In this document: piece by piece, positions 4,241 to 49,034 of the stretch
Position numbering within the stretch: position 1 is the first letter of the stretch
How the letters are laid out: each line of letters begins with the position of its first letter
Assembly: GCF_006345805.1 (NCBI RefSeq)
Contig: NC_043006.1
Span: forward strand, 34,782,001-34,846,000
Reading direction: 5' to 3'
DNA length: 64,000 bases
Source of the DNA: Octopus sinensis
Lineage: Eukaryota
Translations under genes and position numbers: made by a program
The notes under the pieces: model-generated
Told to the model about the DNA's origin: nothing
The model's database searches: none
What the model saw: only the letters and a program-made list of their open reading frames with translations

Positions 4241-4664
4241 AAGATATCTAGATTTAATTTAATCATCCCAGTTCTTAATTAATTCGCCTGTTTAATATAA
4301 ATTTGGTGCATTTGTCTAACAGCATCAACATATCTAATATGGCGGTTGAATTCACGTAGAGTTTCTCTTAAGTTCTCACAGCTGGGCACTGTCACTTGTA
4401 AATGGCTTCTAAGCAACCAGACACAGAAAGTGGCTTATGCTTACTATCCGAAACATTTATAACGATCGCTAGTTTCATCCAATTAACTTGTTAATGAAAT
4501 CAAAACAGCAAAAACGTTAAAGGAATAAGAAGTTTTGTTGGAAACCAAAAATTCAATTTCTTATCGTAGGACTGTTTTCTATTAACCCGTCATCGTGCAG
4601 AATCGCAGCCGTTTTTCTTTCCGACATGATAGGTTTGGTAAATAACCATCATATTAGTTTTCAT

Positions 4665-4920
4665 AAGCTCTGGCGTGAATGTGTGGTAAGGACCTTGCTT
4701 CCGGGTTCAGTCCTACTGCGTGGCACCTTGGGCAAGTGTCTTCTACTATACCCTTGTACCGACCAAAGCCGGAAACTGAAAGAAGCTTGTCGTATATATA
4801 TATACATATGTGTGTGTGTGTGTTTGTCCCCTACCATCGCTTGATAACCGCTGTACTGGGGTCAATTTGCTCGACTAAAGGCAGTGCTCCAGCATGGCAG
4901 CAGTCAATGACTAAAACAAA
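4665..4920 (+). mobile_element. Composite SINE, internally deleted copy
   Basis: Shares head, central and tail blocks with 3786-4240. Confidence 0.8.
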
Positions 4921-7844: not shown

Positions 7845-8342
7845 ACGATTACCATGACCACTATCGTCAACGTCATCATTGCCATCACCGCCATCACCAC
7901 CAGTACTACTACCACCATCATAGTCATCATCATCATCATTACCATCATCGCTTTCATCATCATCATCACCACCACCACCACCACCACCCATCACAACCAC
8001 CATCACTATCATCATCGTCATCATCACTATTACCATCTTCGTCGTCGTCATCATTATTATTGTTACCATAATTACTGTCATCATCATTATGATCACCACC
8101 ACCACCATCACTATCATCATCACCTCCACTACCAGCACCACCATCATCACCATCATTATCATCATCACTATTATCATCGTCATCGTCATCCTCATCACCA
8201 ACACCATCACCATCATCACCATTATCACCACTATCACCATTATCAACACTATCATCCTCATTACCACCATCATCATCATCACTATAACCATCGTCGTCGT
8301 CATCATCATCACCATCATCACCACCATCACCAACACTATCAC

Positions 8343-8393
<51 letters not shown>

Positions 8394-9518
8394 TATCATC
8401 CTGAAATTCCTCCTCTCATCATCACAACCAAGTTCATTATTGCCAATGCTGTCATTTTCATTGCTCTAATTATCCTTATTATCGTTCTCCTGCTCATCTG
8501 TTCGCCATCAACATAATTACCGCACCTAGAACACAAGCATCAACTCAGCCACCGAGAAAAATCACTTCTGTCACCGCCACCACCACCTCCACCACCATCA
8601 TCACCACCACCAACACCACAATCATCATCATCATCATCACCACCCTCTACACCACAAGCAAAATCTTCAACCATCGCCAGCAACATCTGTCTGTTTCACT
8701 ACCGCTTTCGCCATCATCGCTATAATTGCCACTTAACCAACATCAAGAGCAGGCAGGCTGCCACCAGCAGCAACCACCAACGTACCACTAACCAACTGCA
8801 GCCGTTACTACCACCGCCAGCGGAACCATCGCCGAAATTACCGACGCTACCATCAACAGAAACACCACTGACAACACTACTACCACTGGGGTCTCGTCAT
8901 CATCCACACCATCGTCCATACCATTGGCAATCACTATCATCGCCATCGTTATCATCATCATTGCCATCATCATCATCATCTTCATCATCATCTTCATCAT
9001 CATCTTCATCATCATCACTAGCATCTTCAACATCATCGTCGCCATCGTTGTCGTCGTCATCGTCATTGTATACTGTTGCAATTATCCTCATCATCGTCGT
9101 TGTCGTCGTCGTCATCGTCGCAATAATCGTCCTTTTTGCTCCCCCCCCCCCTGCCACCTTCCGTATGTCCTCCTATGCTATTAATTTAATTAAACACTTC
9201 GGAACAGCACTAATTGGAGTGAAATACGAAGAGGAGTCTGGTGATGATGATGATGACGATGACGATGACGACGACGACGACGACGACGATGATGATGATG
9301 ACGATGATGATGATGATGATGATGATGACGACAATGGTGATAATGCTGATGCTGGTGCTGGTGCTGGTGGGGGCGATGACTGCTATAATGATGTTGATAA
9401 TCACGGCGTTGTTGACGATGATGGTGATGATGTTGATGATTATGGAGATGATAACGTTGGTGGTGATGATGAAGCAGATGAAAGCAAGACAAATAAGAAA
9501 GAAGAGGAAGAATTACTA

Positions 9519-9560: not shown

Positions 9561-9725
9561 CATCCGGATTGAGAAGACAAAAGAAAAATGTTGCAAGTGT
9601 TAGGTAAATTAGAAACTCCACTGTAATATAATGATTGATTCTATTTTTAGAAAAGACTTGGATAGGTTGGGGGTGGGGGAGAGGGGGAAATACAGGGAAG
9701 ATTCGGTGTGTGTGTGTGTGTATGT

Positions 9726-10460
9726 TTATGAGATGTGCGCGCGCGCGTGTGTGTGTGTATTTGTGTGATGAGTGTGTATCTATGTTTACGTGAAATGTGT
9801 GTGTGTATTTATGAGATGTGTGTAAGCGTGTATGCGTGTGCATTTGTGTGATGAGTGTGTATCTATGTTTACGTGAAATGTGTGTGTGTATTTATGAGAT
9901 GTGTGTAAGCGTGTATGCGTGTGCATTTGTGTGATGAGTGTGTATCTATGTTTACGTGAAATGTGTGTGTGTGTGTATTTATGAGATGTGTGTAAGCGTG
10001 TATGCGTGTGCATTTGTGTGATGAGTGTGTGTCTATGTTTACGTGAAATGTGTGTGTGTGTATTTATGAGATGTGTGTAAGCGTGTATGCGTGTGCATTT
10101 GTGTGATGAGTGTGTATCTATGTTTACGTGAAATGTGTGTGTGTGTGTGTATTTATGAGATGTGTGTAAGCGTGTATGCGTGTGCATTTGTGTGATGGCT
10201 GTTTATCTATGTTTACGTGATGTGTGTGTATATTTATGAGATGTGTGTAAGCGTGTATGTGTGTGTATTTGTGTGATTGGTGTTTATCTATGTTTACGTG
10301 ATGTGTGTGTATGTTTATATGATTTGTGTCTGTATGTTTATGAGATGTGTGTGTGTGTCTGTTTGTGTGTATGTTAATGTGATATGTGTGTGTGTATCTA
10401 TGTTTACGTGATGTGTCTGTATGCTTATGAGATGTGTGTGCGTATGTGTGTTTATGTTTA
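9726..10460. repeat. Minisatellite, unit about 82-88 bp, about 7 clear plus 2-3 decayed copies
   Basis: Unit tttatgagatgtgtgtaagcgtgtatgcgtgtgcatttgtgtgatgagtgtgtatctatgtttacgtgaaatg(tg)n. Confidence 0.9.
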
Positions 10461-34937: not shown

Positions 34938-35002
<65 letters not shown>

Positions 35003-35004
35003 CT

Positions 35005-35490
35005 TACTTTATCGACCCCGAAAGGATGAAAGGCAAAGTCAATCTCGGCGGAATTTGAACTCAGAACGTTAAGACAGACGAAATACCTGTTTCTTTACTA
35101 CCCACAAGGGACTAAACACAGTGATGACAAACAGGGACAGGCAAACTGATTAAGTCGATTATATCGACCCCAGTGCGTAACAGGTATTCATTTAATCGAC
35201 CCCGTAAGGATGAAAGGCAAAGACGACCTCAGCGGAATTTGAATTCAGAATGTAAAGACAGACGAAATACCTATTTCTTTACTACCCACAAGGGGCTAAA
35301 CACAGAGGGACAAACGGATTAAGTCGATTATATCGACCCCAGTGCGTAACTGGTACTTAATTTATCGACCCCGAAATGATGAAAGGCAAAGTCGACCTCG
35401 GCGGAATTTGAACTCAGAACGTAATGACAGACGAAATACCGCTAAGCATTTCGCCCGGCGTGCTAACGTATCTGCCAGCTCGCCGCCTTA
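35005..35490 (-). mobile_element. tRNA-derived SINE with tandemly triplicated body
   Basis: Three copies of atcgaccccg.aa.gatgaaaggcaaag.c.acctc.gcggaatttgaa.tcagaa.gt..agacagacgaaatacc, with a single head at 35440-35490. Confidence 0.85.
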
Positions 35491-37212: not shown

Positions 37213-37725
37213 TGTGTGTGTACGTGTGTGTTTTCATGTTTTTAATATATACTGCCTTGTTTTTATACAATGACTTGGTCCATTTGTGATCTTTGTTGCT
37301 TGATTGTTAGCCGGTTATTTGATTTCAGCGACTTTTATTAAGATTCACGTACCTCTTTAATTGTGCCTCTTCGTTTCACTTGTGAATAAATGAATAAATA
37401 AGTTGGTGCGTTAAACGGTCGGCTTTAAACACCAGGCTTCTTCTTCGATGTGCGATTGCATAGGTTTGACAGTGTCTGTTTGCGTGGCATATGTGTACGT
37501 GTGGCATACATGTGCATGTTTTCATCTGTGTTTGTGTGTTTGTGTGTGTGTGTGCGTGCGTGTCCTCGTATGTATTCATGAATTTTTGCATGCGTGTTCG
37601 TATACAGCAGTTTATATTGCCGAACTCCAATAACGAATGCGAGAATTGCCAAACATTTATAGCGTACTCTCGAATATATTATGCTGAACAGATAGACAGG
37701 TATGAAGACAGACAGACAGACAGAC

Positions 37726-37806
<81 letters not shown>

Positions 37807-37828
37807 TAGATAGATAGATAGATAGATG

Positions 37829-37999
37829 ATAAAGTGAAAGATAGATCTGTTCTTTATTAGCCACACAGGACCGCACACAGACGGGACAATTACAGGTAGA
37901 ACTTTTCTTTTGGGGATGGATAAAAAAAGGGTTTGGGTTTTTTCGATCAAGAGATCGTAAAAGGAAAGAAAGAGGAAGCAAAAAAAAGTGGGGGAGACT
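37829..37999 (-). mobile_element. Tx1-related 3'-terminal mini-element A in (GATA)n
   Basis: Shares ctttattagccacacagg..gcacacaga..acaattaca.ggtaga.cttttctttt and the cgatc..gatcg motif with the 3' end of the long element. Flanked by (GATA)n on both sides. Confidence 0.8.
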
Positions 38000-38062
<63 letters not shown>

Positions 38063-38581
38063 GGATAGATGGATAGATAGATAGATAGATAGATAGATAG
38101 AGATAGATAGATAGATAGATTGATAGATAGATAGATAGATAGATGGATATGTTTCTTTATTAGCCACACAGGGCTGCACACAGATAGAACAAATTACAAG
38201 GTAGAGCTTTTCTTTTGAAGGTTTAAAAAAAATAAAAAATAAAAATAAAAATAAAATAAAAAATAAGAAAAAAATAAAATAAAATAAAAATAAAATAAAA
38301 AAAGGGGGGGTCGATCAAAAGGGATCGTAAAAGGAGAGAAAGAGGACAAAAAAAAAAGGGGGGGGTTAAAAAAAAGGGGGGAGGAAAAAAAATTGATCAA
38401 TAGGGATCGTTATCACAGAAATGTCAATATGAAGTGTAAAGGGGGGACAGGTGAGGTTTACCCGTGGAAAGAAAAGCCTACGGAAAAGACCACGGTAACC
38501 TCGGTCAATGAAGTCACATGTTATATTTCTTTTTTTTTTTTTTTTTGCAAATAAGCAACTCTCTGTATTAATTTTTACGGT

Positions 38582-41500
38582 TCATAGAATCATAGTCAAG
38601 GTGGCTTCGTCATTCATACGTGCCATTCTTGCTACATTCACCATCTTTTTTTAAAACATTCACTAGACAAAACTTGCCTCTCTACTCTCACTTTTTTCTT
38701 CAAGTGATACTTGAAGAAGTTGATGAGAGATTGACCAGAGAGGAAAGTGTTTGTCTCTAATCCTTTCAGACGCGTCCACCAGATACATTCTTTCGCCATA
38801 GCCACAAGTATGATAAAAATAGCTCTTCCTTCCCGTTTGAAGGAAGGAGGCGTGACGATATTAACGATAGACTCGGCTGATAAACCGACACGTCCCACAC
38901 GTGACAGCAGTCGTTCGACATAAGCCCACAGGTGGGAAATTGCTGGACACTGCACGATTGCGTGCAGAGCGGTTTCGTCGCTCTGCCCGCATCTCGGGCA
39001 GGTCGGCCCCGTGTTTCTCGAGCCATGCCTATAGAGCTTATCCCGAACGGGTAGCGCTTCTCGGTAGCACCGCCAGGCCAGGGATCTCTGGAAGTTGTCC
39101 ATAGGTCCCGGGCCGAAAGTCGTTTGAAACAGGCGGGTCAGGTATTCCTCGTCGACGCCCAGGTTTGCCCCGAGCTCGTCGTCGTACCTCCCCTCCACTA
39201 ATCCCCTATAGAATGCTTTGGTTGTGTGTTGAAGTCACTCAAGGTCGACCCGGGACGGCAGAGTTGCTTGAGAGCAACGCGACACTCGCGGTGCCATTCG
39301 CCCTTCTTCGGCCTCTTTTGATCCACGACTGTAGTTCGGTCATGGAGACGAGTTGCGGGAATGCGTGCCTCACAAACGGCGACCACACCTGTTCACCGTC
39401 GTCTACATAGAGCCGGAGATGTCGCAGTCTCAGCGCGTGTCTGCGCATCATCAACCACGGCATGCCCAGCCCTCCTTTTAACGGGTGTTGACAGCAAATG
39501 GATCGCCTGACCATCGGGACGCATCCTTTCCACAAGAAGCGGAAGAGGATGCGTTCTAGTTTGGTGATGGTAGGGTCGGGACAAGGTACGACGGTCAGGC
39601 GGTAGTAGATGATGGACGCGATGTACGCGTTCACCACCTCCGCCCGACCTTTTAGGGACAGTTTCCTCTCGGCCCATTGCTGGGCGAGAGTGACCACCCT
39701 ACTCGTTATCTCGTTCCAGTTCTTCTCCATTTGGAGGTCCGGACCGAACCAGACCCCGAGCAACTCAACCGGGCCGTCTGTCCAGCGTCCCACGACGGAG
39801 GTACTGGTGGACGGCATGGGTTTGCTTCTCCAGGTGCCGAGCCGCAAGCCCACTGACTTTTCCCGGTTGATTTTTGCTCCTGTCACCGCTTCGTAGTCTT
39901 TCAGTGTCTCGCCGACCCGCTCGATGTGCTCGTGCTTGACACTATGACGGCGTGACGTCGTCCGCGTATGCAGACACGCTCGTCCCGCATCCTAATTCTC
40001 GCGGGATGCCCCTCAGAGTCGCCAGCTTCCGCAGTAGTGGCTCAAGAGTCAATACGTATAGAAGCGCCGAGAGGGGGCATCCCTGACGGACCGAACGTGC
40101 AATGTCGAAGGGTCTCGATAGATGTCCATTTACGCGAATTACCGAACGGATGCCTCTGTACAAGGCAGCTATCCAGCCGCGGAAGACGGACCGAAACCAG
40201 CCGCTCTCAGGACTGCCTCCAAGTATCGATGGTCTACCCTATCAAAGGCTTTCGATTGATCCAAGTTGATCAGGGCCCCACCCATGCCAGGTTCGTTAAC
40301 TACCCTGTCTATGATGTAGCGCATCAGATGGAGGTTGTCATGGATGCTCCGGCCCGGCACGGCGCACGTTTGTGCGTTGTCGACCAGTTTCTCCATGACA
40401 AGCGCCAACCTCTTGGCTAACACCTTTGTCAAAATTTCAGGTCTGCATTGAGCAGAGTGATTGGCCTAAAGTTATCTATAATGTTTCCCTTGTTTGGATC
40501 TTTCTTCAGCAGAGTTACAGCTCCTCGACTCACAAAACCGGGTATGCTCCCGTTTTGCTGCCAGTTGCAGTATACCGCTGCCAAGACGTCTCCAAACAAG
40601 TCTGGCATACAATAGTAAAATTCGTAGGGTAGACCATCCAAACCGGTGATTTGTCCCTCGAGCATTCTGCCATCGCTTCCCGCACTTCCGCCGCCGTGAT
40701 GGCACCTTCGCAGCACCCTGCCTTTCTTGTCGAGAGTCGTGGCAGGCTATGTAGGTAGGCACTGAAGTCTACCCTACGTTCTTGCCCTCCACTCGTCCCG
40801 AACAGTCGGGCAAAATGCTGCTGAAAGGCCTCACACATTTTACTTGGCTCGAGCAATTCGCGCCCCTGTTCATCTACCAGTGACCGAATGGTGGCTTTGT
40901 TGCCCTGTTGCGCCTCTGCCACCCGGGCCTCTCTCGCGGCTCCAACACCTTCGTTCCTTAGAGCACGCATCCTAGCTCTGACAGCACATCCTTCGTGTTT
41001 GGCGTTGAAGTGTTGGTCGAGGGCCAACCTCGCCGCCAAAACGTCGGATGCGATGCCGCTTCTAATTGCCTCTTCTAGCTTCTTAACTAGCTCACCCTCT
41101 ACTCTATTTCTATCTATGGCTAGTGCTTTGCTGTACCTAATCGCTTCTGCTTTTACTGCTCTCTTGAGGGCAAACCACCATTTGTTGTTGATGATGGCTC
41201 CCGTCAAAGCCCTCTTTACTAGTGTGCTAATCCGGTCTCTGAAAACTTGTCTGGACGGGAATGATGCGTTCAGTTCCAGTACCCAGGACCCTGTCTATGT
41301 GCCTTATCTAAGTCTAGCGTACACGTCACCAATTTGTGATCCGTGTAGCTGACTGTGTGGAATTGTGGACATCCTAAGTTATCCTTGTCTACTGTCCTAC
41401 ACAGTATCCTATCTAGATACGATCTCGACGACCCACTGCGGTTGCTCCATGTCCACGTTGGTGCATTTGGGTGGTCGAGTCGGTACCTGTCAGACAGTTG

Positions 41501-42016
41501 GAATCGTCTGAGCAGGTCTCTGAGGCATTTGCATCCCCTTCTGTTTCTGTCTCTACCCACGTAGTCTACATGCGTGTCCAAGGTAGCATTCCAATCCCCC
41601 ACTAAGAGTAAAGGACGAGACGTTCCCAAGAATACTTCTAGACGTCGAAAGAAATCCGCCCGACCTGTTAAGGGCGGTGCGTAGACTGATACGAGTCGAA
41701 AAGCGCACCCATTGCTGCCGTCAACATCCAGAACGATCAGTCTACCCTCCGGGTCTACGAATATCGTCTTGACTTCGAGATCCAGGCTCTTGTGAAAAAG
41801 TACCGCGGTGCCACTACCGCCCATCCTCGGCAGACAGGGAGCGAAATAAATGTTAAACTGTCCGCCAAACATGGACTTTAGGGCCCGTGGCTCGTGGAGT
41901 CTGGTCTCACTTATGGCTATGATTCCCAAATCATGTGACTTGATGTCATTTAGGAGGTATCCTTGTTTCCAAGGAGACCCCAAGCCACGCGCATTCACAC
42001 AACCAATCTTGACCAT
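38582..42016 (-). CDS. Tx1-like ORF2 (APE endonuclease, reverse transcriptase, CCHC zinc finger), about 1145 aa when rejoined; frameshifted in this assembly
   Basis: EN: MVKIGCVNARGL, ISETR, LVGDWN, SYLDRI, YTDH. RT: FRPITLLNAD, DQSKAFDRVDH, VRQGCPLS, YADD. C-terminus: CPRCGQSDETALHAIVQC. Confidence 0.88.
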
Positions 42017-42066
42017 GATTCTATTGGGGTGTGTGCTTTAAAACACACAAGTGAAAGTACAGAGAG

Positions 42067-43083
42067 TTACTTACTTGTGTCGAAAGTTTTGGCTTCCTCG
42101 TTCTTTGATGTGTCTTCGAGGAGGTTTCTATATAGTTTTTGGGACAGATATTTCTGGAAACCCCCTACAGCATTTGGGAAGAGGGCTTTGAGTTTGTGGT
42201 GTTGTGTTTGTGTGATGTGTAGTATTTTGATGTGTTTGGGTGGTGTAGTGCGTGGATGATTGCTATTTTTAAAGTCATCTTCACAAATGTTTGTGTATCC
42301 TGTGATGTACTCCATTAGTTTGGAGTCTTTTGTGTCTATCGCTGATAGCATTGTTTTTGTGGTGTTGGTGCTTGTTTGTTGTGTATGGAGTTTTCAGGGT
42401 TCAGGTATCTCCCTGCTTTGTTTGCGATTTCTTGTTTGGTTTTTTTTGATCTTTTTTTTTTACCCCCTGTGGCTATTTGCCATTCTGTCGAACTTTCATC
42501 GTTAGATGAAAAGTCTGACGAATCAGCAGGGGGCAAGGGTAAAGCGTCTGGGTGTGTTTGTGCGGTTGTAGATATTGTTGTGGTGCGCGGGGAGGGTGTT
42601 GCTGGGGGGTTTGTTGTGGTTATTGTCTCTCCTATCCTTCATTGCTTGTCTTCTTGTTTATTCTTGTTGTTATTGTTGTGTTGGAATTGGTTTATTTGTT
42701 GTTGGTGGTGATGATTCTGTTCTTGGCGCTGGTGTTGGTGTTGTTTGGTTGGGTTGGTTTGTTCTTTGTTGTTTTTCCTGCATTTCCGCATACAGCTTCT
42801 TGACTAGCTGTCCATATTGTGGTGTGGGCAATAATCCTGGCTTTTGTGATTTTTCCTGTGGCTGTTGTTGTTGTTGTAATTTTGCGGCAGATTTGCACTC
42901 CTTTTTGAGGTGTGCCTCACTGCCACATGTATAGCATCGTGGCCTTCTGCCCTCGACTACTACGTATAACTTGCGGCCATCCTCAAGATGTACGTGGGTG
43001 GGGATTTTATTTATGTCCTCTTGACTTATGTGGAAGAGGAACTCTATTCTCTTTCCCAGCCAGTCCTTGTTTTCCGAAACACC
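42067..43083 (-). CDS. Tx1-like ORF1, C-terminal part (zinc knuckle and Q/P/T-rich region), 5'-truncated and frameshifted
   Basis: LYVVVEGRRPRCYTCGSEAHLKKEC is a CX2CX4HX4C motif at 42895-42936. The stop codon lies 50 nt upstream of the ORF2 ATG. Confidence 0.8.
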
Positions 43084-43131
<48 letters not shown>

Positions 43132-43214
43132 TGTTTCTTTATTAGCCACACAGGGCTGCACACAGATAGAACAAATTACAAGGTAGAGCTTTTCTTTTGA
43201 AGGTTTAAAAAAAA

Positions 43215-43251
<37 letters not shown>

Positions 43252-43903
43252 TAAAAAATAAAATAAAAATAAAAAAGGGGGGGGTCGATCAAAAGGGATC
43301 GTAAAAGGAGAGAAAGAGGACAAAAAAAGGGGGGGGTTAAAAAAAAGGGGGAGAGGAAAAAAAATTGATCAATAGGGATCGTTATCAAAGAAAGTCAATA
43401 TGAAGTGTAAAGGGGAGGACAGGTGAGGTTTACCCGTGGAAAGAAAAGCCTACGGAAAAGACCACGGTAACCTCGGTCAATGAAGTCACATGTTATATTT
43501 CTTTTTTTTTTTTTGTTGCAAATAAGCTACTCTCTGTATTAATTTTTACGGTTCATAGAATCATAGTCAAGGTGGCTTCGTCATTCATACGTGCCATCCT
43601 TGCTACATTCACCATCTTTTTTAAAACATTCACTAGACAAAACTTGCCTCTCTACTCTCACTTTTTTCTTCAAGTGATACTTGAAGAAGTTGAGAGATTG
43701 ACCAGAGAGAAAAAGTGTTTGTTCTCTAATCCTTTCAGACGCGTCCACCAGATACATTCTTTCGCCATAGCCACAAGTATGATAAAAATAGCTCTTCCTT
43801 CCCGTTTGAAGGAAGGAGGCGTGACGATATTAACGATAGACTCGGCGGATAAACCGACACGTCCCACACGTGACAGCAGTCGTTCGACATAAGCCCACAG
43901 GTG
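43132..43903 (-). mobile_element. Tx1-like copy C (3' about 770 bp) in (GATA)n
   Basis: Very similar to the 3' end of copy B, with a few substitutions and homopolymer differences. Truncated at ..cccacaggtg|gatagatag. Confidence 0.92.
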
Positions 43904-43930
43904 GATAGATAGATAGATAGATAGATAGAC

Positions 43931-44099
43931 AAAGTGAAAGATATATCTGTTTCTTTATTAGCCACACAGGACCGCACACAGACGGGACAAATTACAAGGT
44001 AGAACTTTTCTTTTTGGGGATAAAAAAAGGGGGTTTGGTTTTCGATCAAGAGATCGTAAAAGGAAAGAAAGAGGGAAGCAAAAAAAAGTGGGGGAGACT
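43931..44099 (-). mobile_element. Tx1-related mini-element A' in (GATA)n
   Basis: Near-identical to 37829-37999, including the same 5' break ..gggggagact|gatag. Confidence 0.82.
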
Positions 44100-44174
<75 letters not shown>

Positions 44175-44183
44175 GGATAGATG

Positions 44184-44235
<52 letters not shown>

Positions 44236-44236
44236 T

Positions 44237-44307
44237 GTTTCTTTATTAGCCACACAGGGCTGCACACAGATAGAACAAATTACAAGGTAGAGCTTTTCTT
44301 TTGAAGG

Positions 44308-44341
<34 letters not shown>

Positions 44342-45206
44342 AGGGGGAGGTTCGATCAAAAGGGATCGTAAAAGGAGAGAAAGAGGACAAAAATAAGGGG
44401 GGTTAAAAAAATAAAAAAAATAAAAAAAAGGGGGGGGGAGAGGAAAAAAAATGATCAATAGGGATCGTTATCACAGAAATGTCAATATGAAGTGTAAAGG
44501 GGAGGACAGGTGAGGTTTACCCGTGGAAAGAAAAGCCTGCGGAAAAGACCACGGTAACCTCGGTCAATGAAGTCACATTTTATATTTCTTTTTTTTTTTT
44601 TTTTTTTTTTTTTTTTGCAAATAAGCAACTCTCTGTTTTCGATTTCTGGGTTCATGACTATGCTCAAGGTGGCTTCGTCATTCATACGTGCCATTCTTGC
44701 TACATTCACCCACTCTTTTTTTAAAACATTCGCTAGACAAAACTTGCCTCTCTACTCTCACTTTCCTTTTCAAGTGGTACTTGAAGAAGTTGATGAGAGA
44801 TTGACCAGAGAGGAAAGTGTTTGTCTCCAATCCTTTCAGACGACGTCCACCAGATACATTCTTTCGCATAGCCACAAGGATGATGATAGCTCTTCCTTCC
44901 GTTTGAAGGAAGGAGGCGTGACAATATTGACGATAGACTCAGCTGATAAACCGACTCGTCCCACACGTGACAGCAGTTGTTCGACATAAGCCCACAGGTC
45001 GGAAATTGTTGGACACTGAACGAGTGCGTGCAGAACGGTTTCGTCGCTCTGACCGCATCTCGGGCAGGTCGGCCCCGTGTTTCTCGAGCCGTGTCTGTAG
45101 AGCTTATCCCGAACGGGTAGCGCTTCTCGGTAGCACTGCCAGGCCAGGGATCTCTGGAAGTTGTCCATGGGTCCTGGCCCGAAAGTCGTCCCGAACAGGC
45201 GGGTCA
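44237..45206 (-). mobile_element. Tx1-like copy D (3' about 970 bp, diverged subfamily) in (GATA)n
   Basis: Encodes the same C-terminal zinc finger (CPRCGQSDETVLHALVQC) with more substitutions than copy C. Truncated at ..gggtca|gatagatag. Confidence 0.92.
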
Positions 45207-45479
45207 GATAGATAGATAGATAGATAGAATTTTTCATACGAAAGATGTATTATAAATTATCTCAAATAGCATATCGATGATTTATTGTTTTTTTAACTTC
45301 ATAAAAAATTGTAAAACAAATATGCTATTTTGTCAAATGTAATGGAATTCCGAAAATATTTTGAGAATATTTTTTATCGCAATATGTCCGTCAACAAAAA
45401 GGGTGTGGAAACCAAGGAAAAAGTGGTGGAGGAGACTTTAGAAAATGTACCATATTTTTTCCTTCGTCTTTTACTTATT

Positions 45480-45660
45480 TTAGTTATCAGACTGCGGCCA
45501 AGCTGGGGTACCACCTTCAAAGGTTTTTAGTCAAATAAATCGACCCCAGTAGTTATTTTATAAATAATTATTATAACGGTAACTTTTGCCAGACCGCTAA
45601 GTTACAAAGACATGAACTAATCATAATCGGACTATTGTTAGTGTTGTGGGCAAGGGAGAT
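45480..45660 (-). mobile_element. Diverged composite SINE 3' half
   Basis: gactgcggccaagctggggtaccacc..atcgacccc..ccgctaagttac. Confidence 0.65.
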
Positions 45661-45854: not shown

Positions 45855-48130
45855 TTACGAAGAACCTCTTCTAATATGTGGCACTTGGTGAAGAATGGAG
45901 TTTGATATAGCTACTCTTATTTGCACCTCTTGCCGTGAGGTAGGTTCATCTGGGACTCTCGACAGGAAGATGTCCAGCTTTGATTTAAAAACCGCTACAT
46001 CTACTTTGTGCAAGTTTCCCAGACTCTTTGGGAGAATATTAAAAAGCTGTGGGCCCTTGAAACCCAGGCTGTTGCAGAAGCTAGTCCTGAAGCGTGATGG
46101 CATTGCTGGGATCTTTGGCACTATGCAGTGTCGTCCCGTTCTAGCATTGGCGTAGCTTACAATGTCAAAATTTGACACAATTCCTTCCAGGATCTTCCAG
46201 ACATATATTACTGCATACCTCTCCCGTCTTCTCTCCAGGGAGTAGAGTCTTAGGTGTTTCAACATTTCCTAGTAGCTGAGCTGTTGCAAAGAGACGATCT
46301 TCTTTGTGAATCTTCTCTTGATTGCTTCAAGGTCCGCTGTTAATTTCACACTGGTGGGTGACCATAGCTGTGAACAGTAATCCATGCGGCTGAGGACGAA
46401 TGTCCGCCAGAGAACCATCATGGTTTCCTTATCTCTGGTTCTGAATGTTCTTAGGATTCACCCAGCCAGTCGTCTGCACTTTGTCGCGATCCTGGTAATG
46501 TGCACTTGCAAAGAGGTATCCTCACTCATGTCGATACCCAAGTCCCTCATAGACTTAGGCTCTGGGATTGAAATTCCCTGTGGACCGGTGTATCCTGTAA
46601 GTTTAATATTCAGTTTTGGATGCTGGTAGCGCAGAGCCTGGAATTTTTCCGCATTAAACTGCATATTATTATCCTCAGTCCATCTGTAGATTGAGTCCAA
46701 CTCCTGCTGCAGGTGTGCAACATCGCTGGGGTTCTGTATTTTCTGCGAGACTTTCGTATCGTCTGCATAGCTTGCCAGAGTGGCTATCCGGGCATTTGAG
46801 GGCATATCTGAGAGGGCCACTATAAAAAGCAGTGGTCCCAAGACAGTGCCCTGTGGAACACCACTCACTATTTGTGTGTTCATAGAGGTGGCTCCATTAA
46901 CCACTACTGCCTGACTCCTATCTTTCAGGAAGTCATGTAACAACACTCCAAGTTTTCCAGCTATGCCGAGGTCACGCAGTTTGTGACATATCATACCATG
47001 ATCCACCTTGTCAAAAGCTTTTGCAAAATCAAGGTTGATTACGTCCACATTTGATTTGTTGAGTAACTACCTCAACACCCAGTCATAATGTTGTAAGAGC
47101 TGGGTCAGGCAGTTCCTACCTGGTCGAAAACCATGCTGGGTATCACTCATCAAGTTATTTTCCTCAAGGAATGCGATTAGTTTCTTTCTGACTATTCGTT
47201 CTATGACTTTGCTGGTGTGTGAAGTCAGAGAGATAGGCCTATAGGTTTTGGCATCTGCTCTACTTCCCCCTTTATGTCTTGGGCATATTATTCCCTCCTT
47301 CAGCTTGCTTGGCAGTTTGCCATTTGTAAGAAAGCTCTGGAAGACAATCTTGAGGGGTTTTGCCAGGGCATGCTTACACACTTTGAGGAGGATTGCTGGG
47401 AAACCATCTGGACCAGCAGTTGAGTTTGTGTCCACTTCATCTAAGGCTAGTAGGACATCTTCTTCGCTAATTTCAATACATTCTATTGTAACCGCCTCGC
47501 TGGTTATAGGTGAGACGGCAAAGAAGTCCACTGTTTCGTTCACTTGTTTGTGTTCCAACGGGGTGGTAAAGACACTTTTGAACTGGACATTCAGCATCTC
47601 ACTGATCTTAGTTGGACTGTCTGTGAGGGAGCCATCCTTTTGGAGGAGGGGTCCTATCATGTAGTGTACTGACACTGTTTCGTTCGCGTAATGAAAGAAG
47701 GCCTTTGGGTTTGATTTAATGTTTTTTATAACCGAGCCTTCTTTGTCTGCCTGTCTTGAATCTTGATCCTATTTGTTTTGGCCTTGTGCTCTGGGACATA
47801 TTTCTGGCATACGGCTTGCACAGAAGACATGAAACATTCTAGTTTCATGTCAATGTCTGGTGTGGAGAGACATCCGGATGAGGTCATCTCGGATGTATAC
47901 AGCAACTCCACCATGGCTCCTTTCCCTTCTGTCTGTTCGCAGTATGGAATACTTTGGTATGTGTACTTCTGCGTCCTCTATATCAGGTCTGAGGTGAGTT
48001 TCCACGAGTGCTATGCATAGGGCTTGATTGCATGCAGTAAGATCTCTCAGGAAAGAAATTTTGTTTCTATTTTTATGCAACAGGTCCCCAATATTTAGTA
48101 AAAGTATTGGGGTGACGGCTGTGCAGGCGT
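45855..48130 (-). pseudogene. CR1-like ORF2 (partial APE and RT), with stops, frameshifts and deletions
   Basis: LVETHL, GGVAVYIRDDL, AGPDGFP, YRPISLTS, QHGFRPGR, LDFAKAFDKVDH, GVPQGTVLGPLLF, YADDTK, LYSLERRRER, GPQLFNILP. Confidence 0.9.
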
Positions 48131-49034
48131 TAGGGGAGGCCATCCCGTATCTGTTGACTGTGGTGGTCTTGCATAGTGGTGGGCAGGGTTCCTTCTCTGT
48201 GCTTGGTGTAGCCAGGTTAGTTGCCGGACAATTCTTTGCGCCATGCATAAAAAAGACTCTTGCTCAGCTGCTGCGTTGCGCAGAACATCTGAGGAGCACA
48301 CTTTTCTGAAAGCTTTCCTGGGAGACATTTCTTGTCTTCCCTCAGTAACGCTCTTCTCTTTGAGTCCCCTGAAGTTCTGGCGGGGTGTCGGGTGGGCGAA
48401 CCGGTAGTTTTTGCCGTCCTTCTCATGCCAACATTTGCCCCGGAGGTAGAACTTACAGGTTCTTCGGTGCCTTCCAGATTTCTTCTTTCCTAAAGTGTAC
48501 TGGGTGGCATTGGATCCTCCATGAGGTTCTCTGCTGTTTGTGTGGTGGGTTAGGGTTTCAGCTTTGGTTGTTTTGCCTTTTCTTCCCTTTCCCTCCTTAT
48601 TTTTGTTTTCGGTCCTTCCTTTTTTTCTTCTGTTTTTCTAATTTCTCATTTCTTTGTAAGACCACTGGTACAGGGAGGCTTCCGGTTTCTGCTCCCTTGG
48701 CTACCCTATCGTTCACCGGGGTAGGTGATCCATTTTCCTGAGGAGCCCCTGGATCACAGAGACTTCCGGGTTCCTTCTCTTTTACCTCCTCTTCATCCTC
48801 ATCAGCCTTGCCACAATAATTTTCAATTATGTTATCCAATGTTTTGATGTGTGGTCTTATAAGAATGTAAGACCGGATAAATTCACCTTTTTATCGTTCT
48901 ATTTGGTCAATGGTTCTATGAAATCCATTGCTCTTCAGCGCAGCAGTGATGATGTTGTTCGGCGGATCGCCACTAGCAATCGTCCATGCTCTTAGAAGAA
49001 GATTTAACTCTTTCTTTTCCCACTTTGGCGCCAT
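48095..49034 (-). pseudogene. Putative LINE ORF1 with N-terminal Myb/SANT-like helix motif and degenerate CCCH finger
   Basis: MAPKWEKKELNLLLRAW..ITAALKSNGFHRTIDQIER*, continuing in frame into the 48597-48839 ORF. CKFYLRGKCWHEKDGKNYRFAH at 48392-48457. Confidence 0.55.

What the first reader, a model, noticed from the sequence alone, without database searches (positions are those of the whole stretch)
37690..45228. Array of Tx1-like retrotransposons that appear to target the (GATA)n/(TATC)n microsatellite
Seen: the order is (GATA)n-A-(GATA)n-B-(GATA)n-C-(GATA)n-A'-(GATA)n-D-(GATA)n, all on one strand. Every element end abuts the tetranucleotide. On the element strand all five 5' junctions are compatible with ..CTATC|element (1-nt ambiguity for C and D), and B, C and D end ..AATAAAGAAACA|TATC with no poly(A). 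B, C and D have different truncation points and sequences, so they look like independent insertions into one target. No copies occur outside (GATA)n in this window. Established: the Tx1 group includes sequence-specific families (Kibi and Koshi on microsatellites, Keno on U2 snRNA, Dewa on tRNA-gene spacers) whose APE endonuclease sets the target. I do not recall a (GATA)n-specific family, but that must be checked. Inference: a possibly undescribed TATC^TATC-specific LINE whose repeated insertion builds tandem arrays.
Basis: partly seen in the sequence, partly recalled or inferred. Interest (0 to 1): 0.9.

Follow-up and report, generated by a model that had tools for sequence, protein, structure and literature searches.

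The report
LINE copies stacked in GATA microsatellite
Five truncated, dead copies of an L1/Tx1-type jumping gene sit head-to-tail inside one (GATA)n microsatellite, and relatives in the octopod Argonauta hians lie in the same repeat, so this lineage probably homes to (TATC)n, a target I found in no paper.

Summary
On the minus strand, 45226→37690 reads (TATC)5-D-(TATC)34-A'-(TATC)6-C-(TATC)12-B-(TATC)38-A-(TATC)n(TGTC)n. Every element end abuts the repeat, and the window holds no copy elsewhere.

B (4.9 kb) starts inside ORF1. Its ORF2 has an APE endonuclease, RT and C-terminal zinc domain, broken by at least 5 frameshifts. Its best solved relative is human L1 ORF2p. C, D, A and A' are 5'-truncated copies.

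A and A' share one 5' end and one CATC-TATC-CATC interruption upstream, so there are about three events, not five. The junction register has little power.

Two divergent LINEs in Argonauta hians end in the same box, GTGGCTAATAAAGAAA(CA), followed by (TATC)n. Both have TATC-type repeat on the 5' side too, inside two copies of one repeated unit. This argues for homing to (TATC)n rather than a tail alone.

Octopod SINEs share the 3' box. A third Argonauta LINE with an ATT tail sits at the end of such a SINE. Base-pairing between the RNA tail and the target is therefore a live alternative to endonuclease specificity.

Tx1-clade membership and Repbase/Dfam novelty could not be tested. Verdict: probably a new member of the known microsatellite-targeting LINEs. 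Moderate interest.

The parts
45207..45226 (-). (TATC)5 on the 5' side of the outermost element D, followed upstream by non-repeat sequence. Read as a remnant of the target microsatellite.
44236..45206 (-). Element D: 971-bp 5'-truncated copy with the ORF2 C-terminal zinc region and 3' UTR. It ends GTGGCTAATAAAGAAACA. It differs from B at 7.5% of aligned sites.
44100..44235 (-). Spacer (TATC)13 CATC TATC CATC (TATC)18 between D and A'. It shares its interruption pattern with the B-A spacer.
43928..44099 (-). Element A': short copy of a sister subfamily, 3' UTR only. It has the same 5' end as A. It ends GTGGCTAATAAAGAAACAG plus a 19-nt degenerate tail (43928-43946).
43904..43927 (-). Spacer (TATC)6 between A' and C.
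43132..43903 (-). Element C: 772-bp 5'-truncated copy. It differs from B at 2-3% of aligned sites, and its truncation point differs from D's.
43084..43131 (-). Spacer (TATC)12, perfect, between C and B.
38150..43083 (-). Element B: 4934 bp, 5'-truncated inside ORF1. It carries the ORF1 remnant, ORF2 with at least 5 frameshifts, and an A/T- and G-rich low-complexity 3' UTR that ends GTGGCTAATAAAGAAACA.
42673..43083 (-). B ORF1 remnant: C-terminal part of an RRM-like region, one CCHC knuckle (CYTCGSEAHLKKEC) and a Q-rich tail.
   Evidence: zf-CCHC E 8e-4, just under Pfam's cutoff
41270..42016 (-). B ORF2 N-terminus: APE-type endonuclease, an intact 248-aa ORF. The conserved N8, E37, D141, N143, D226 and H227 positions are present.
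   Evidence: (Exo_endo_phos E 2e-16)
39242..40746 (-). B ORF2 reverse-transcriptase region, split over three frames, with the YADD motif.
   Evidence: RVT_1 E 2.5e-26
38641..39234 (-). B ORF2 C-terminal domain with the CPRC...HAIVQC zinc motif.
   Evidence: (zf-RVT E 1.5e-8)
38000..38149 (-). Spacer between B and A: about 38 TATC units with CATC/AATC variants, a 2-nt register shift, and the shared CATC TATC CATC (TATC)15 block next to A.
37825..37999 (-). Element A, the paralogue of A'. Core 37847-37999, degenerate tail 37825-37846.
37690..37824 (-). 3' outer microsatellite (TATC)n followed by (TGTC)n. It has the same compound GACA/GATA form as the unoccupied arrays elsewhere in the window, so it looks like the native target array.

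Best explanation
This is a decayed head-to-tail stack of 5'-truncated copies of one octopod-type L1/Tx1-group LINE lineage. The lineage inserts preferentially, and in one orientation, into (TATC)n·(GATA)n microsatellites.

Shown:
- The element encodes ORF1 (RRM-like region plus CCHC) and ORF2 (APE endonuclease, RT, zinc domain).
- It has no poly(A).
- It ends in a conserved box, GTGGCTAATAAAGAAACA, that runs straight into TATC repeats.
- TATC repeat lies on both sides of the copies here and of two divergent relatives in Argonauta hians.

Inferred mechanism:
1. The transcript ends ...AAACA(UAUC)n.
2. The ORF2 protein binds the 3' box in cis. SINEs carrying the same box are mobilised in trans.
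3. The endonuclease nicks the GATA strand of a genomic (TATC)n array.
4. The freed ...GATA-3' end pairs with the (UAUC)n tail and primes reverse transcription.
5. Synthesis usually aborts, giving 5' truncation, and the cDNA end is joined to the upstream TATC repeat through 1-2 nt of microhomology.

Each insertion leaves TATC repeat on both sides, so it recreates and enlarges its own target, and later copies pile up head-to-tail. About three events built this array: D+A', C and B+A. The D+A' and B+A units share ancestry, either as read-through co-transcripts of a LINE-(TATC)n-A composite or by local duplication.

Whether the endonuclease itself reads TATC, or tail/target pairing does the selecting, is not resolved.
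For: - Anatomy and absence of copies elsewhere in the window.
- Coding capacity and L1-group affinity.
- Three different 5' truncation points, each abutting TATC.
- (TATC)5 plus unique sequence on the 5' side of the outermost copy, and a compound (TATC)n(TGTC)n array of native type on the 3' side.
- GATA runs cover 1.16% of the rest of the window.
- Cross-species support from Argonauta hians locus L006. It holds two LINEs whose ORF2s are only 67-70% identical in DNA. Both end GTGGCTAATAAAGAAA(CA) plus (TATC)5 or (TATC)14. Both are preceded by TATC-type repeat, TATC TATC (TGTC)5 in one and TATC CCTC (CATC)4 in the other. Both sit between the same 27-nt left arm and the same 179-bp right arm (98.9% identical). 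This is two separate hits in the microsatellite of one repeated unit.
- The 3' box is conserved among LINEs and SINEs of two species.
- Known precedent for microsatellite-specific APE-type LINEs: PMC3812793, PMC4494074.
Against: - Independent informative 5' flanks are few: one outermost copy here, two in Argonauta.
- The internal copies could have entered the tails of earlier copies.
- B+A and D+A' are not independent.
- Short relatives from other assemblies (L013, L014) show no TATC at their broken ends. They are also 3'-truncated, so they look like rearranged fragments.
- At least six other GATA loci in the window are unoccupied.
- Dispersed SINEs with the same 3' box end ...GAAATCTATT next to unrelated flanks. 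The TATC tail could therefore be a slippage expansion of a terminal ATCTAT.
- No endonuclease biochemistry and no empty-site comparison is available.
Confidence: 0.62

Rival explanations
1. Tail only. (TATC)n is an element-templated 3' tail made by RT slippage, as in RTE, L2, CR1 or I elements, and insertion is not targeted. The array arose from one or two insertions followed by unequal exchange between the tails and microhomology-mediated deletions.
For: - LINEs and SINEs often end in microsatellite-like tails (PMC6007223).
- SINEs with the same 3' box end in ATCTATT without a long repeat.
- A/A' and their spacers are duplicated.
- The sequences just before the C and D truncation points in B (TTCC, TACC) resemble TATC, so they could serve as slippage or deletion sites.
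Against: - It needs three separate deletions that each end exactly at a TATC array.
- It does not explain (TATC)5 upstream of the outermost copy next to unique DNA.
- It does not explain the native-type (TGTC)n part of the 3' array.
- It does not explain two 30%-diverged Argonauta LINEs lying at the same position of one repeated unit with TATC-type repeat on both sides.
Confidence: 0.2
2. Self-homing. The target is not the microsatellite as such but the 3' end or tail of earlier copies of the same LINE/SINE superfamily. New copies always land behind a relative.
For: - Head-to-tail SINE-SINE-SINE-LINE in Argonauta L007, with the LINE starting right after a SINE 3' box.
- Head-to-tail SINE units in the window at 35490-35001.
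- Relatives at about 40% identity form head-to-tail arrays of full-length copies with no spacer repeat.
Against: - The outermost copy D is preceded by (TATC)5 and then sequence without the 3' box.
- Neither of the two Argonauta L006 LINEs is preceded by the GTGGCTAAT box, which occurs in L006 only at the LINEs' own 3' ends; each follows a shared 27-nt arm plus TATC-type repeat, and the first of these arms lies in SINE-like sequence.
Confidence: 0.1
3. Assembly artefact. The stack is a mis-assembly of dispersed copies joined through their microsatellites.
For: Microsatellite-rich sequence is hard to assemble. The window holds one N gap, at 62113-62212.
Against: - No gap lies in or near the array.
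- The copies differ in sequence and length, and the spacers carry individual interruption patterns.
- The same architecture is seen in an independent Argonauta assembly.
Confidence: 0.03

Closest known systems
Kibi ((TC)n), Koshi ((TTC)n) and crocodilian Tx1 families ((TTCC)n/(TTTC)n), the microsatellite-specific Tx1-clade LINEs (Kojima & Fujiwara 2004; PMC4494074, PMC3812793)
   Same: APE-type two-ORF LINE of the L1/Tx1 group. No poly(A). Bracketed by one microsatellite motif in one orientation. 5'-truncated copies.
   Different: The motif here is TATC/GATA, a mixed purine/pyrimidine tetranucleotide rather than a polypyrimidine tract. The host is a cephalopod rather than a vertebrate. Clade relationship is untested. 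Here a conserved 3' box is shared with SINEs.
Waldo ((ACAY)n) and Mino ((AC)n), R1-clade microsatellite-specific LINEs (PMC3812793)
   Same: APE-type LINEs that target a microsatellite, Waldo a tetranucleotide one.
   Different: A different clade. The ORF2 here matches L1 ORF2p and L1 endonuclease structures, and no R1Bm or TRAS1 endonuclease chain appeared among the PDB hits at E<=1e-3.
Dong ((TAA)n, R4 clade) and Togen ((TG)n, NeSL-related) (PMC3812793, PMC4640811)
   Same: Microsatellite-homing non-LTR elements.
   Different: By my own knowledge of the R4 clade, and PMC4640811 for the RLE clades in general, those use a restriction-like endonuclease placed C-terminal to RT. This element has an N-terminal APE domain.
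Stringent-type LINE/SINE pairs with microsatellite-like 3' tails: RTE/Bov-B with their SINEs (PMC6007223); L2/UnaL2, CR1 and I factor (own knowledge)
   Same: A conserved 3' box shared by LINE and SINE. A short tandem-repeat tail instead of poly(A). A proposed role for tail/target base-pairing at the start of reverse transcription.
   Different: Those families are dispersed, with only 1-2 nt of target overlap. Here the full repeat is present on both flanks, and copies stack inside one array.
Array-forming LINEs such as Zepp of Chlorella (named in PMC5203782; its nested-array habit is from my own knowledge)
   Same: Head-to-tail clusters built because each copy offers a landing site for the next.
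   Different: Zepp uses poly(A). Here the landing site is a (TATC)n array.

Membership tests
L1 group (L1 + Tx1 clades) of APE-type non-LTR retrotransposons | ORF2 with an N-terminal APE endonuclease, a central RT and a C-terminal Cys/His zinc domain | tested here: met
   Pfam finds Exo_endo_phos (2e-16), RVT_1 (2.5e-26) and zf-RVT (1.5e-8) in that order. Catalytic positions are conserved.
L1 group (L1 + Tx1 clades) of APE-type non-LTR retrotransposons | Closest sequence similarity to L1-type ORF2 proteins rather than to R2 or other clades | tested here: met
   phmmer against the PDB gives human L1 ORF2p at E 3e-50 over residues 4-866, and R2 proteins at 1e-15 to 1e-16 in the RT only. L1 endonuclease structures match; R1Bm and TRAS1 endonucleases are not listed.
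Tx1 clade | The RT domain groups with Tx1L, Keno, Kibi and Koshi in a phylogeny, apart from L1 proper | not testable with these tools
   No labelled Tx1 sequence was reachable. Protein hits carry no informative names, and the supplement of PMC4494074 is not held. Indirect: O. vulgaris repeat annotation lists 'L1-Tx1' as its only L1-group class among recently active LINEs (PMC13282606).
Tx1 clade | Type I-like ORF1 (RRM plus CCHC knuckle), not the Transposase_22 type of vertebrate L1 | tested here: inconclusive
   The ORF1 remnant has one CCHC knuckle (zf-CCHC 19.8 bits against a cutoff of 20.8) and no Transposase_22 hit. PMC5203782 links RRM/zf-CCHC ORF1s of non-mammalian animals to Tx1. ORF1 is 5'-truncated here.
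Microsatellite-specific LINEs (functional class: Kibi, Koshi, Waldo, Mino, Dong) | The same microsatellite on both the 5' and 3' flanks of independent copies, in one orientation | tested here: met
   Window array and two divergent Argonauta elements. The number of independent cases is small, about 5. PMC4494074 uses a criterion of more than 20% of flanks, which needs a genome-wide census.
Microsatellite-specific LINEs (functional class) | The endonuclease cleaves the target repeat sequence-specifically | not testable with these tools
   Needs recombinant endonuclease and nicking assays.
Kibi/Koshi lineage | Target (TC)n or (TTC)n | tested here: not met
   The flanks are (TATC)n, not polypyrimidine repeats.
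Stringent-type LINE with SINE partner and templated repeat tail | A 3'-terminal box shared between LINE and SINE | tested here: met
   CC(C/T)TGTGG(C/G)TA(A/G)TA(A/G)AGAAA is shared by five window copies, three Argonauta LINEs, Argonauta tRNA-head-like SINEs and a window SINE.
Stringent-type LINE with SINE partner and templated repeat tail | A conserved 3' stem-loop recognised by the RT | tested here: not met
   RNAalifold predicts no pairs on the 14-sequence alignment. The B 3' end folds no better than shuffles, z = +0.88.

The most novel reading that the evidence does not exclude
In this octopod LINE/SINE superfamily the insertion site is chosen mainly by base-pairing between the RNA's short 3' tail and the nicked target. 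Changing the tail would then re-aim the element.

The pattern that fits this:
- (UAUC)n-tailed LINEs land in (TATC)n arrays.
- An (AUU)n-tailed relative lies in an ATT-rich SINE tail.
- Box-ended SINEs land behind one another.

That would make it a naturally 'RNA-programmable' homing LINE, and a driver of the growth and interruption of Bkm-type GATA/GACA arrays in cephalopod genomes.
Probability: 0.25. Interest if true: 0.7.

Novelty: new member of a known kind. Interest (0 to 1): 0.45.

Why it matters
Site-specific LINEs are the natural models for how target-primed reverse transcription can be aimed, and they are templates for gene-insertion tools.

- All microsatellite targets I found in the literature are AC, ACAY, TC, TTC, TTCC/TTTC, TAA or TG. 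A TATC/GATA-homing L1/Tx1-group family in cephalopods would add a new target and a new host phylum.
- It comes with a SINE partner and with relatives whose tails differ. That makes the question 'endonuclease or RNA tail?' directly testable by swapping tails.
- It would tie part of the unusual microsatellite landscape of these genomes to retrotransposon activity. Each insertion splits and extends an array.

If Repbase or Dfam already lists the family with this target, the finding is routine annotation.

Tried and rejected
- Exact scans for the 22-nt 3' end (CTGTGTGGCTAATAAAGAAACA) in metagenome, prokaryotic-genome and viral contig collections gave 0 hits.
- A protein-guided locus search in metagenome contigs with a C-terminal alignment found no relative.
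- Exact look-up of the window's endonuclease ORF found nothing on record, so the source genome could not be identified.
- Clade assignment by protein names failed. The hits are unnamed or 'hypothetical'. The HMMER scan shows a huge superfamily (70,595 hits at E<=1e-3) but carries no labels.
- The supplement of the Tx1 phylogeny paper is not held.
- A conserved RNA hairpin at the 3' end was not found.
- ARAGORN called no tRNA-like SINE heads.
- I asked whether the upstream (TATC)5 is the tail of the neighbouring second LINE (RT at 46458-47675). Its ORF ends near 45858, and a different SINE-like repeat (45451-45617) lies between, so no link could be shown.
- I asked whether the other GATA arrays in the window are tails of this family. 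Their flanks lack the 3' box.
- Short homologous contigs L008-L014 are too short or rearranged to inform on flanks.
- Ten literature searches found no GATA/TATC-specific LINE. This is absence of evidence only.


Full report
**Observation**

On the minus strand, from 45226 down to 37690, the order is:

unique flank – (TATC)5 – D (971 bp) – (TATC)34 – A' (172 bp) – (TATC)6 – C (772 bp) – (TATC)12 – B (4934 bp) – (TATC)~38 – A (175 bp) – (TATC)n(TGTC)n – unique flank.

- No other copy exists in the 64 kb.
- B, C and D end identically in ...GTGGCTAATAAAGAAACA, followed at once by TATC repeats and no poly(A).
- The 15-nt core of this box occurs five times against zero expected in shuffles.
- GATA runs make up only 1.16% of the rest of the window, so the association is not chance.

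**What the element is**

Three-frame translation of B shows the following parts.

- An ORF1 remnant that begins inside an RRM-like region and carries one CCHC knuckle.
- An ORF2 of about 1135 residues, split by at least five frameshifts.
- Pfam finds Exo_endo_phos, RVT_1 and zf-RVT in that order, and a borderline zf-CCHC in ORF1.
- The stitched ORF2 matches human L1 ORF2p structures at E 3e-50 over residues 4-866. It matches R2 proteins only in the RT core, and it matches L1 endonuclease structures. No R1-clade endonuclease appears.
- Endonuclease catalytic positions and YADD are present.

So this is an APE-type LINE of the L1/Tx1 group, and every copy here is dead and 5'-truncated. B starts in ORF1. 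D and C start at B positions about 3940 and 4149. A and A' belong to a sister subfamily, 80-87% identical to B's 3' UTR. They keep only the 3' UTR and carry a 19-22 nt degenerate tail before the clean TATC repeat.

**How many events**

- B and C differ at 2-3% of aligned sites, and B and D at 7.5%.
- A and A' start at exactly the same base.
- The spacers upstream of A and A' both read CATC TATC CATC (TATC)15-18 next to the element.

Hence B+spacer+A and D+spacer+A' share ancestry. Either both are 5'-truncated retrocopies of a read-through LINE-(TATC)n-A composite, or a local duplication made them. The array therefore records about three events, not five.

The 5' junctions are all compatible with ...TATC|element. 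However, C and D have 1-2 nt of microhomology with the repeat, so the register argument is weak.

**Relatives**

Protein searches returned these close relatives:

| Hit | Identity | Source |
|---|---|---|
| P0001 | 68% | GCA_024449705.1, organism not identifiable with these tools |
| P0056 | 81%, C-terminal fragment | ENA contig |
| P0054, P0057 | 53-61% | 'hypothetical proteins' of the octopod Argonauta hians |

The window is therefore most likely cephalopod. This is an inference.

*Argonauta locus L006.* It holds two LINEs on one strand (tblastn) whose ORF2s are only 67-70% identical in DNA.

- One ends GTGGCTAATAAAGAAACA|(TATC)14. The other ends GTGGCTAATAAAGAAA|TC(TATC)4.
- Both are followed by the same 179-bp sequence (98.9% identical) and preceded by the same 27-nt sequence.
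- After that 27-nt arm come TATC TATC (TGTC)5 in one case and TATC CCTC (CATC)4 in the other.

Flanks that are near-identical around bodies that differ by 30% mean two separate insertions into the microsatellite of a repeated unit. This is the best evidence that TATC repeat is the landing site and not only a tail.

*Argonauta locus L007.* A third LINE (61% identical) ends GTGGCTAATAAAAGAAATA plus (ATT)4. It starts immediately after three head-to-tail SINEs that end GTGGCTAATAGAGAAATCTATTT.

*SINE partners.* The same box closes dispersed SINE copies in L007, and a SINE in the window at 35490-35271. The lineage is therefore a stringent-type LINE/SINE system defined by a primary-sequence 3' box. 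No conserved hairpin was found.

*Distant relatives.* Relatives at about 40% identity from marine assemblies form head-to-tail arrays of full-length copies with no spacer repeat.

**Target or tail?**

For a target:
- (TATC)5 lies next to unique DNA upstream of the outermost copy.
- The (TGTC)n part of the downstream array matches the compound form of the unoccupied arrays in the window.
- Three different truncation points each abut the repeat.
- The two Argonauta cases have TATC-type repeat on both sides.

For a tail only:
- SINEs with the same box end in ATCTATT without a long repeat.
- Microsatellite-like tails are common in LINEs (PMC6007223).
- Part of the array is duplicated.

I put 0.62 on TATC-homing, 0.2 on tail-only plus rearrangement, 0.1 on homing to relatives' ends, and 0.03 on mis-assembly.

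**Mechanism (inferred)**

1. The RNA ends ...AAACA(UAUC)n.
2. ORF2p binds the 3' box.
3. The endonuclease nicks the GATA strand.
4. The ...GATA-3' end pairs with the tail and primes reverse transcription.
5. Aborted cDNAs are joined to the upstream repeat by microhomology.

Each insertion leaves repeat on both sides, so the target regenerates and copies stack. Whether the endonuclease or the tail pairing provides the specificity is open. The ATT-tailed relative sitting in an ATT-rich SINE tail hints at pairing.

**Comparison with known systems**

Known microsatellite-specific LINEs:

| Family | Target | Clade | Source |
|---|---|---|---|
| Waldo | ACAY | R1 | PMC3812793 |
| Mino | AC | R1 | PMC3812793 |
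| Kibi | TC | Tx1 | PMC3812793 |
| Koshi | TTC | Tx1 | PMC3812793 |
| Crocodilian Tx1 families | TTCC/TTTC | Tx1 | PMC4494074 |
| Dong | TAA | R4 | PMC3812793 |
| Togen | TG | NeSL-related | PMC4640811 |

Some HERO families are also reported to target microsatellites (PMC4640811).

- None of ten searches found a GATA/TATC-specific family.
- Octopus vulgaris is reported to have 13 recently active L1-Tx1 families, but without target analysis (PMC13282606).
- L1-group membership is met. Tx1-clade membership could not be tested, because no labelled references were reachable. The R1 clade and the Kibi/Koshi target are not met.

**Verdict**

This is a real feature, correctly seen. It is probably a new member, with a new target motif and a new host phylum, of the known class of microsatellite-homing APE-type LINEs. 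It has an attached SINE partner and a plausible tail-guided component. Interest is moderate. The decisive steps are a genome-wide flank census, empty-site comparison, a Repbase/Dfam check and endonuclease or tail-swap assays.

Noticed in passing
window 34939-35490 (minus strand): A 220-bp tRNA-head-like SINE ends CCCCTTGTGGGTAGTAAAGAAATAG, a box like the LINE's 3' box. It is followed head-to-tail by a shorter unit, and then by a third unit that stops at SINE position 137 and runs straight into (TATC)16. A 3'-truncated SINE abutting TATC repeat is not explained by ordinary TPRT.
   Followed up: partly
window, whole: All 17 perfect runs of at least 5 GATA units have GATA on the + strand and none have TATC, including about 7 loci outside the array. 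The native arrays are mostly compound (GACA)n(GATA)n, i.e. Bkm-like. The strand bias is unexplained.
   Followed up: partly
window 45858-48263 (minus strand): A second, unrelated APE-type LINE with RVT_1 in ORFs 46458-47048 and 47067-47675 and a C-terminal FKSKLDIFLSRVPDEP motif. It lies just upstream of the array on the same strand. A SINE-like repeat at 45451-45617, with five other copies in the window, separates it from the (TATC)5.
   Followed up: partly
window 25147-26007 (minus strand): A 286-aa ORF with Cys-rich C-terminal motifs and no Pfam hit. It may be the remnant of another mobile element.
   Followed up: partly
L006 4546-4595, 12787-12965, 13190-13230, 18896-19074 (Argonauta hians): A repeated unit 'X' made of a 27-nt left arm, a TATC-type repeat and a 179-bp right arm. 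It occurs twice, 6 kb apart, each copy occupied by a different LINE. The nature of X (SINE, MITE or local duplication) is unknown. Element 1's 5' region also contains a ~157-bp tandem duplication (4579-4888) that begins with TGTC repeats.
   Followed up: partly
L007 4903-5363 and 11173-11210 (Argonauta hians): Three head-to-tail SINEs sit directly upstream of a full-length LINE that ends in (ATT)4 instead of TATC. This looks like insertion into a partner SINE's tail.
   Followed up: partly
L002 (period 6484 bp), L004 and L005 (period ~6430 bp): LINEs about 40% identical, from marine ENA assemblies, form head-to-tail arrays of full-length ORF1+ORF2 copies with no spacer repeat. Their 3' end is ...GAAATAAAGCAGACTAGAAGGT, without poly(A).
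   Followed up: partly
window 7916-8400, 9713-10329, 15249-15718, 62113-62212: Very long (CAT)~161 and (AGG)~155 arrays, an 83-bp satellite (7 copies), and a 100-N assembly gap. About 6% of the window is perfect simple repeat of at least 20 bp.
   Followed up: no
window 37825-37846 and 43928-43946: The A-type copies carry a 19-22 nt degenerate stretch (GATMTATCTTTCACTTTRTC) between the 3' box and the clean TATC repeat. It may be an old mutated tail copied from their master.
   Followed up: no
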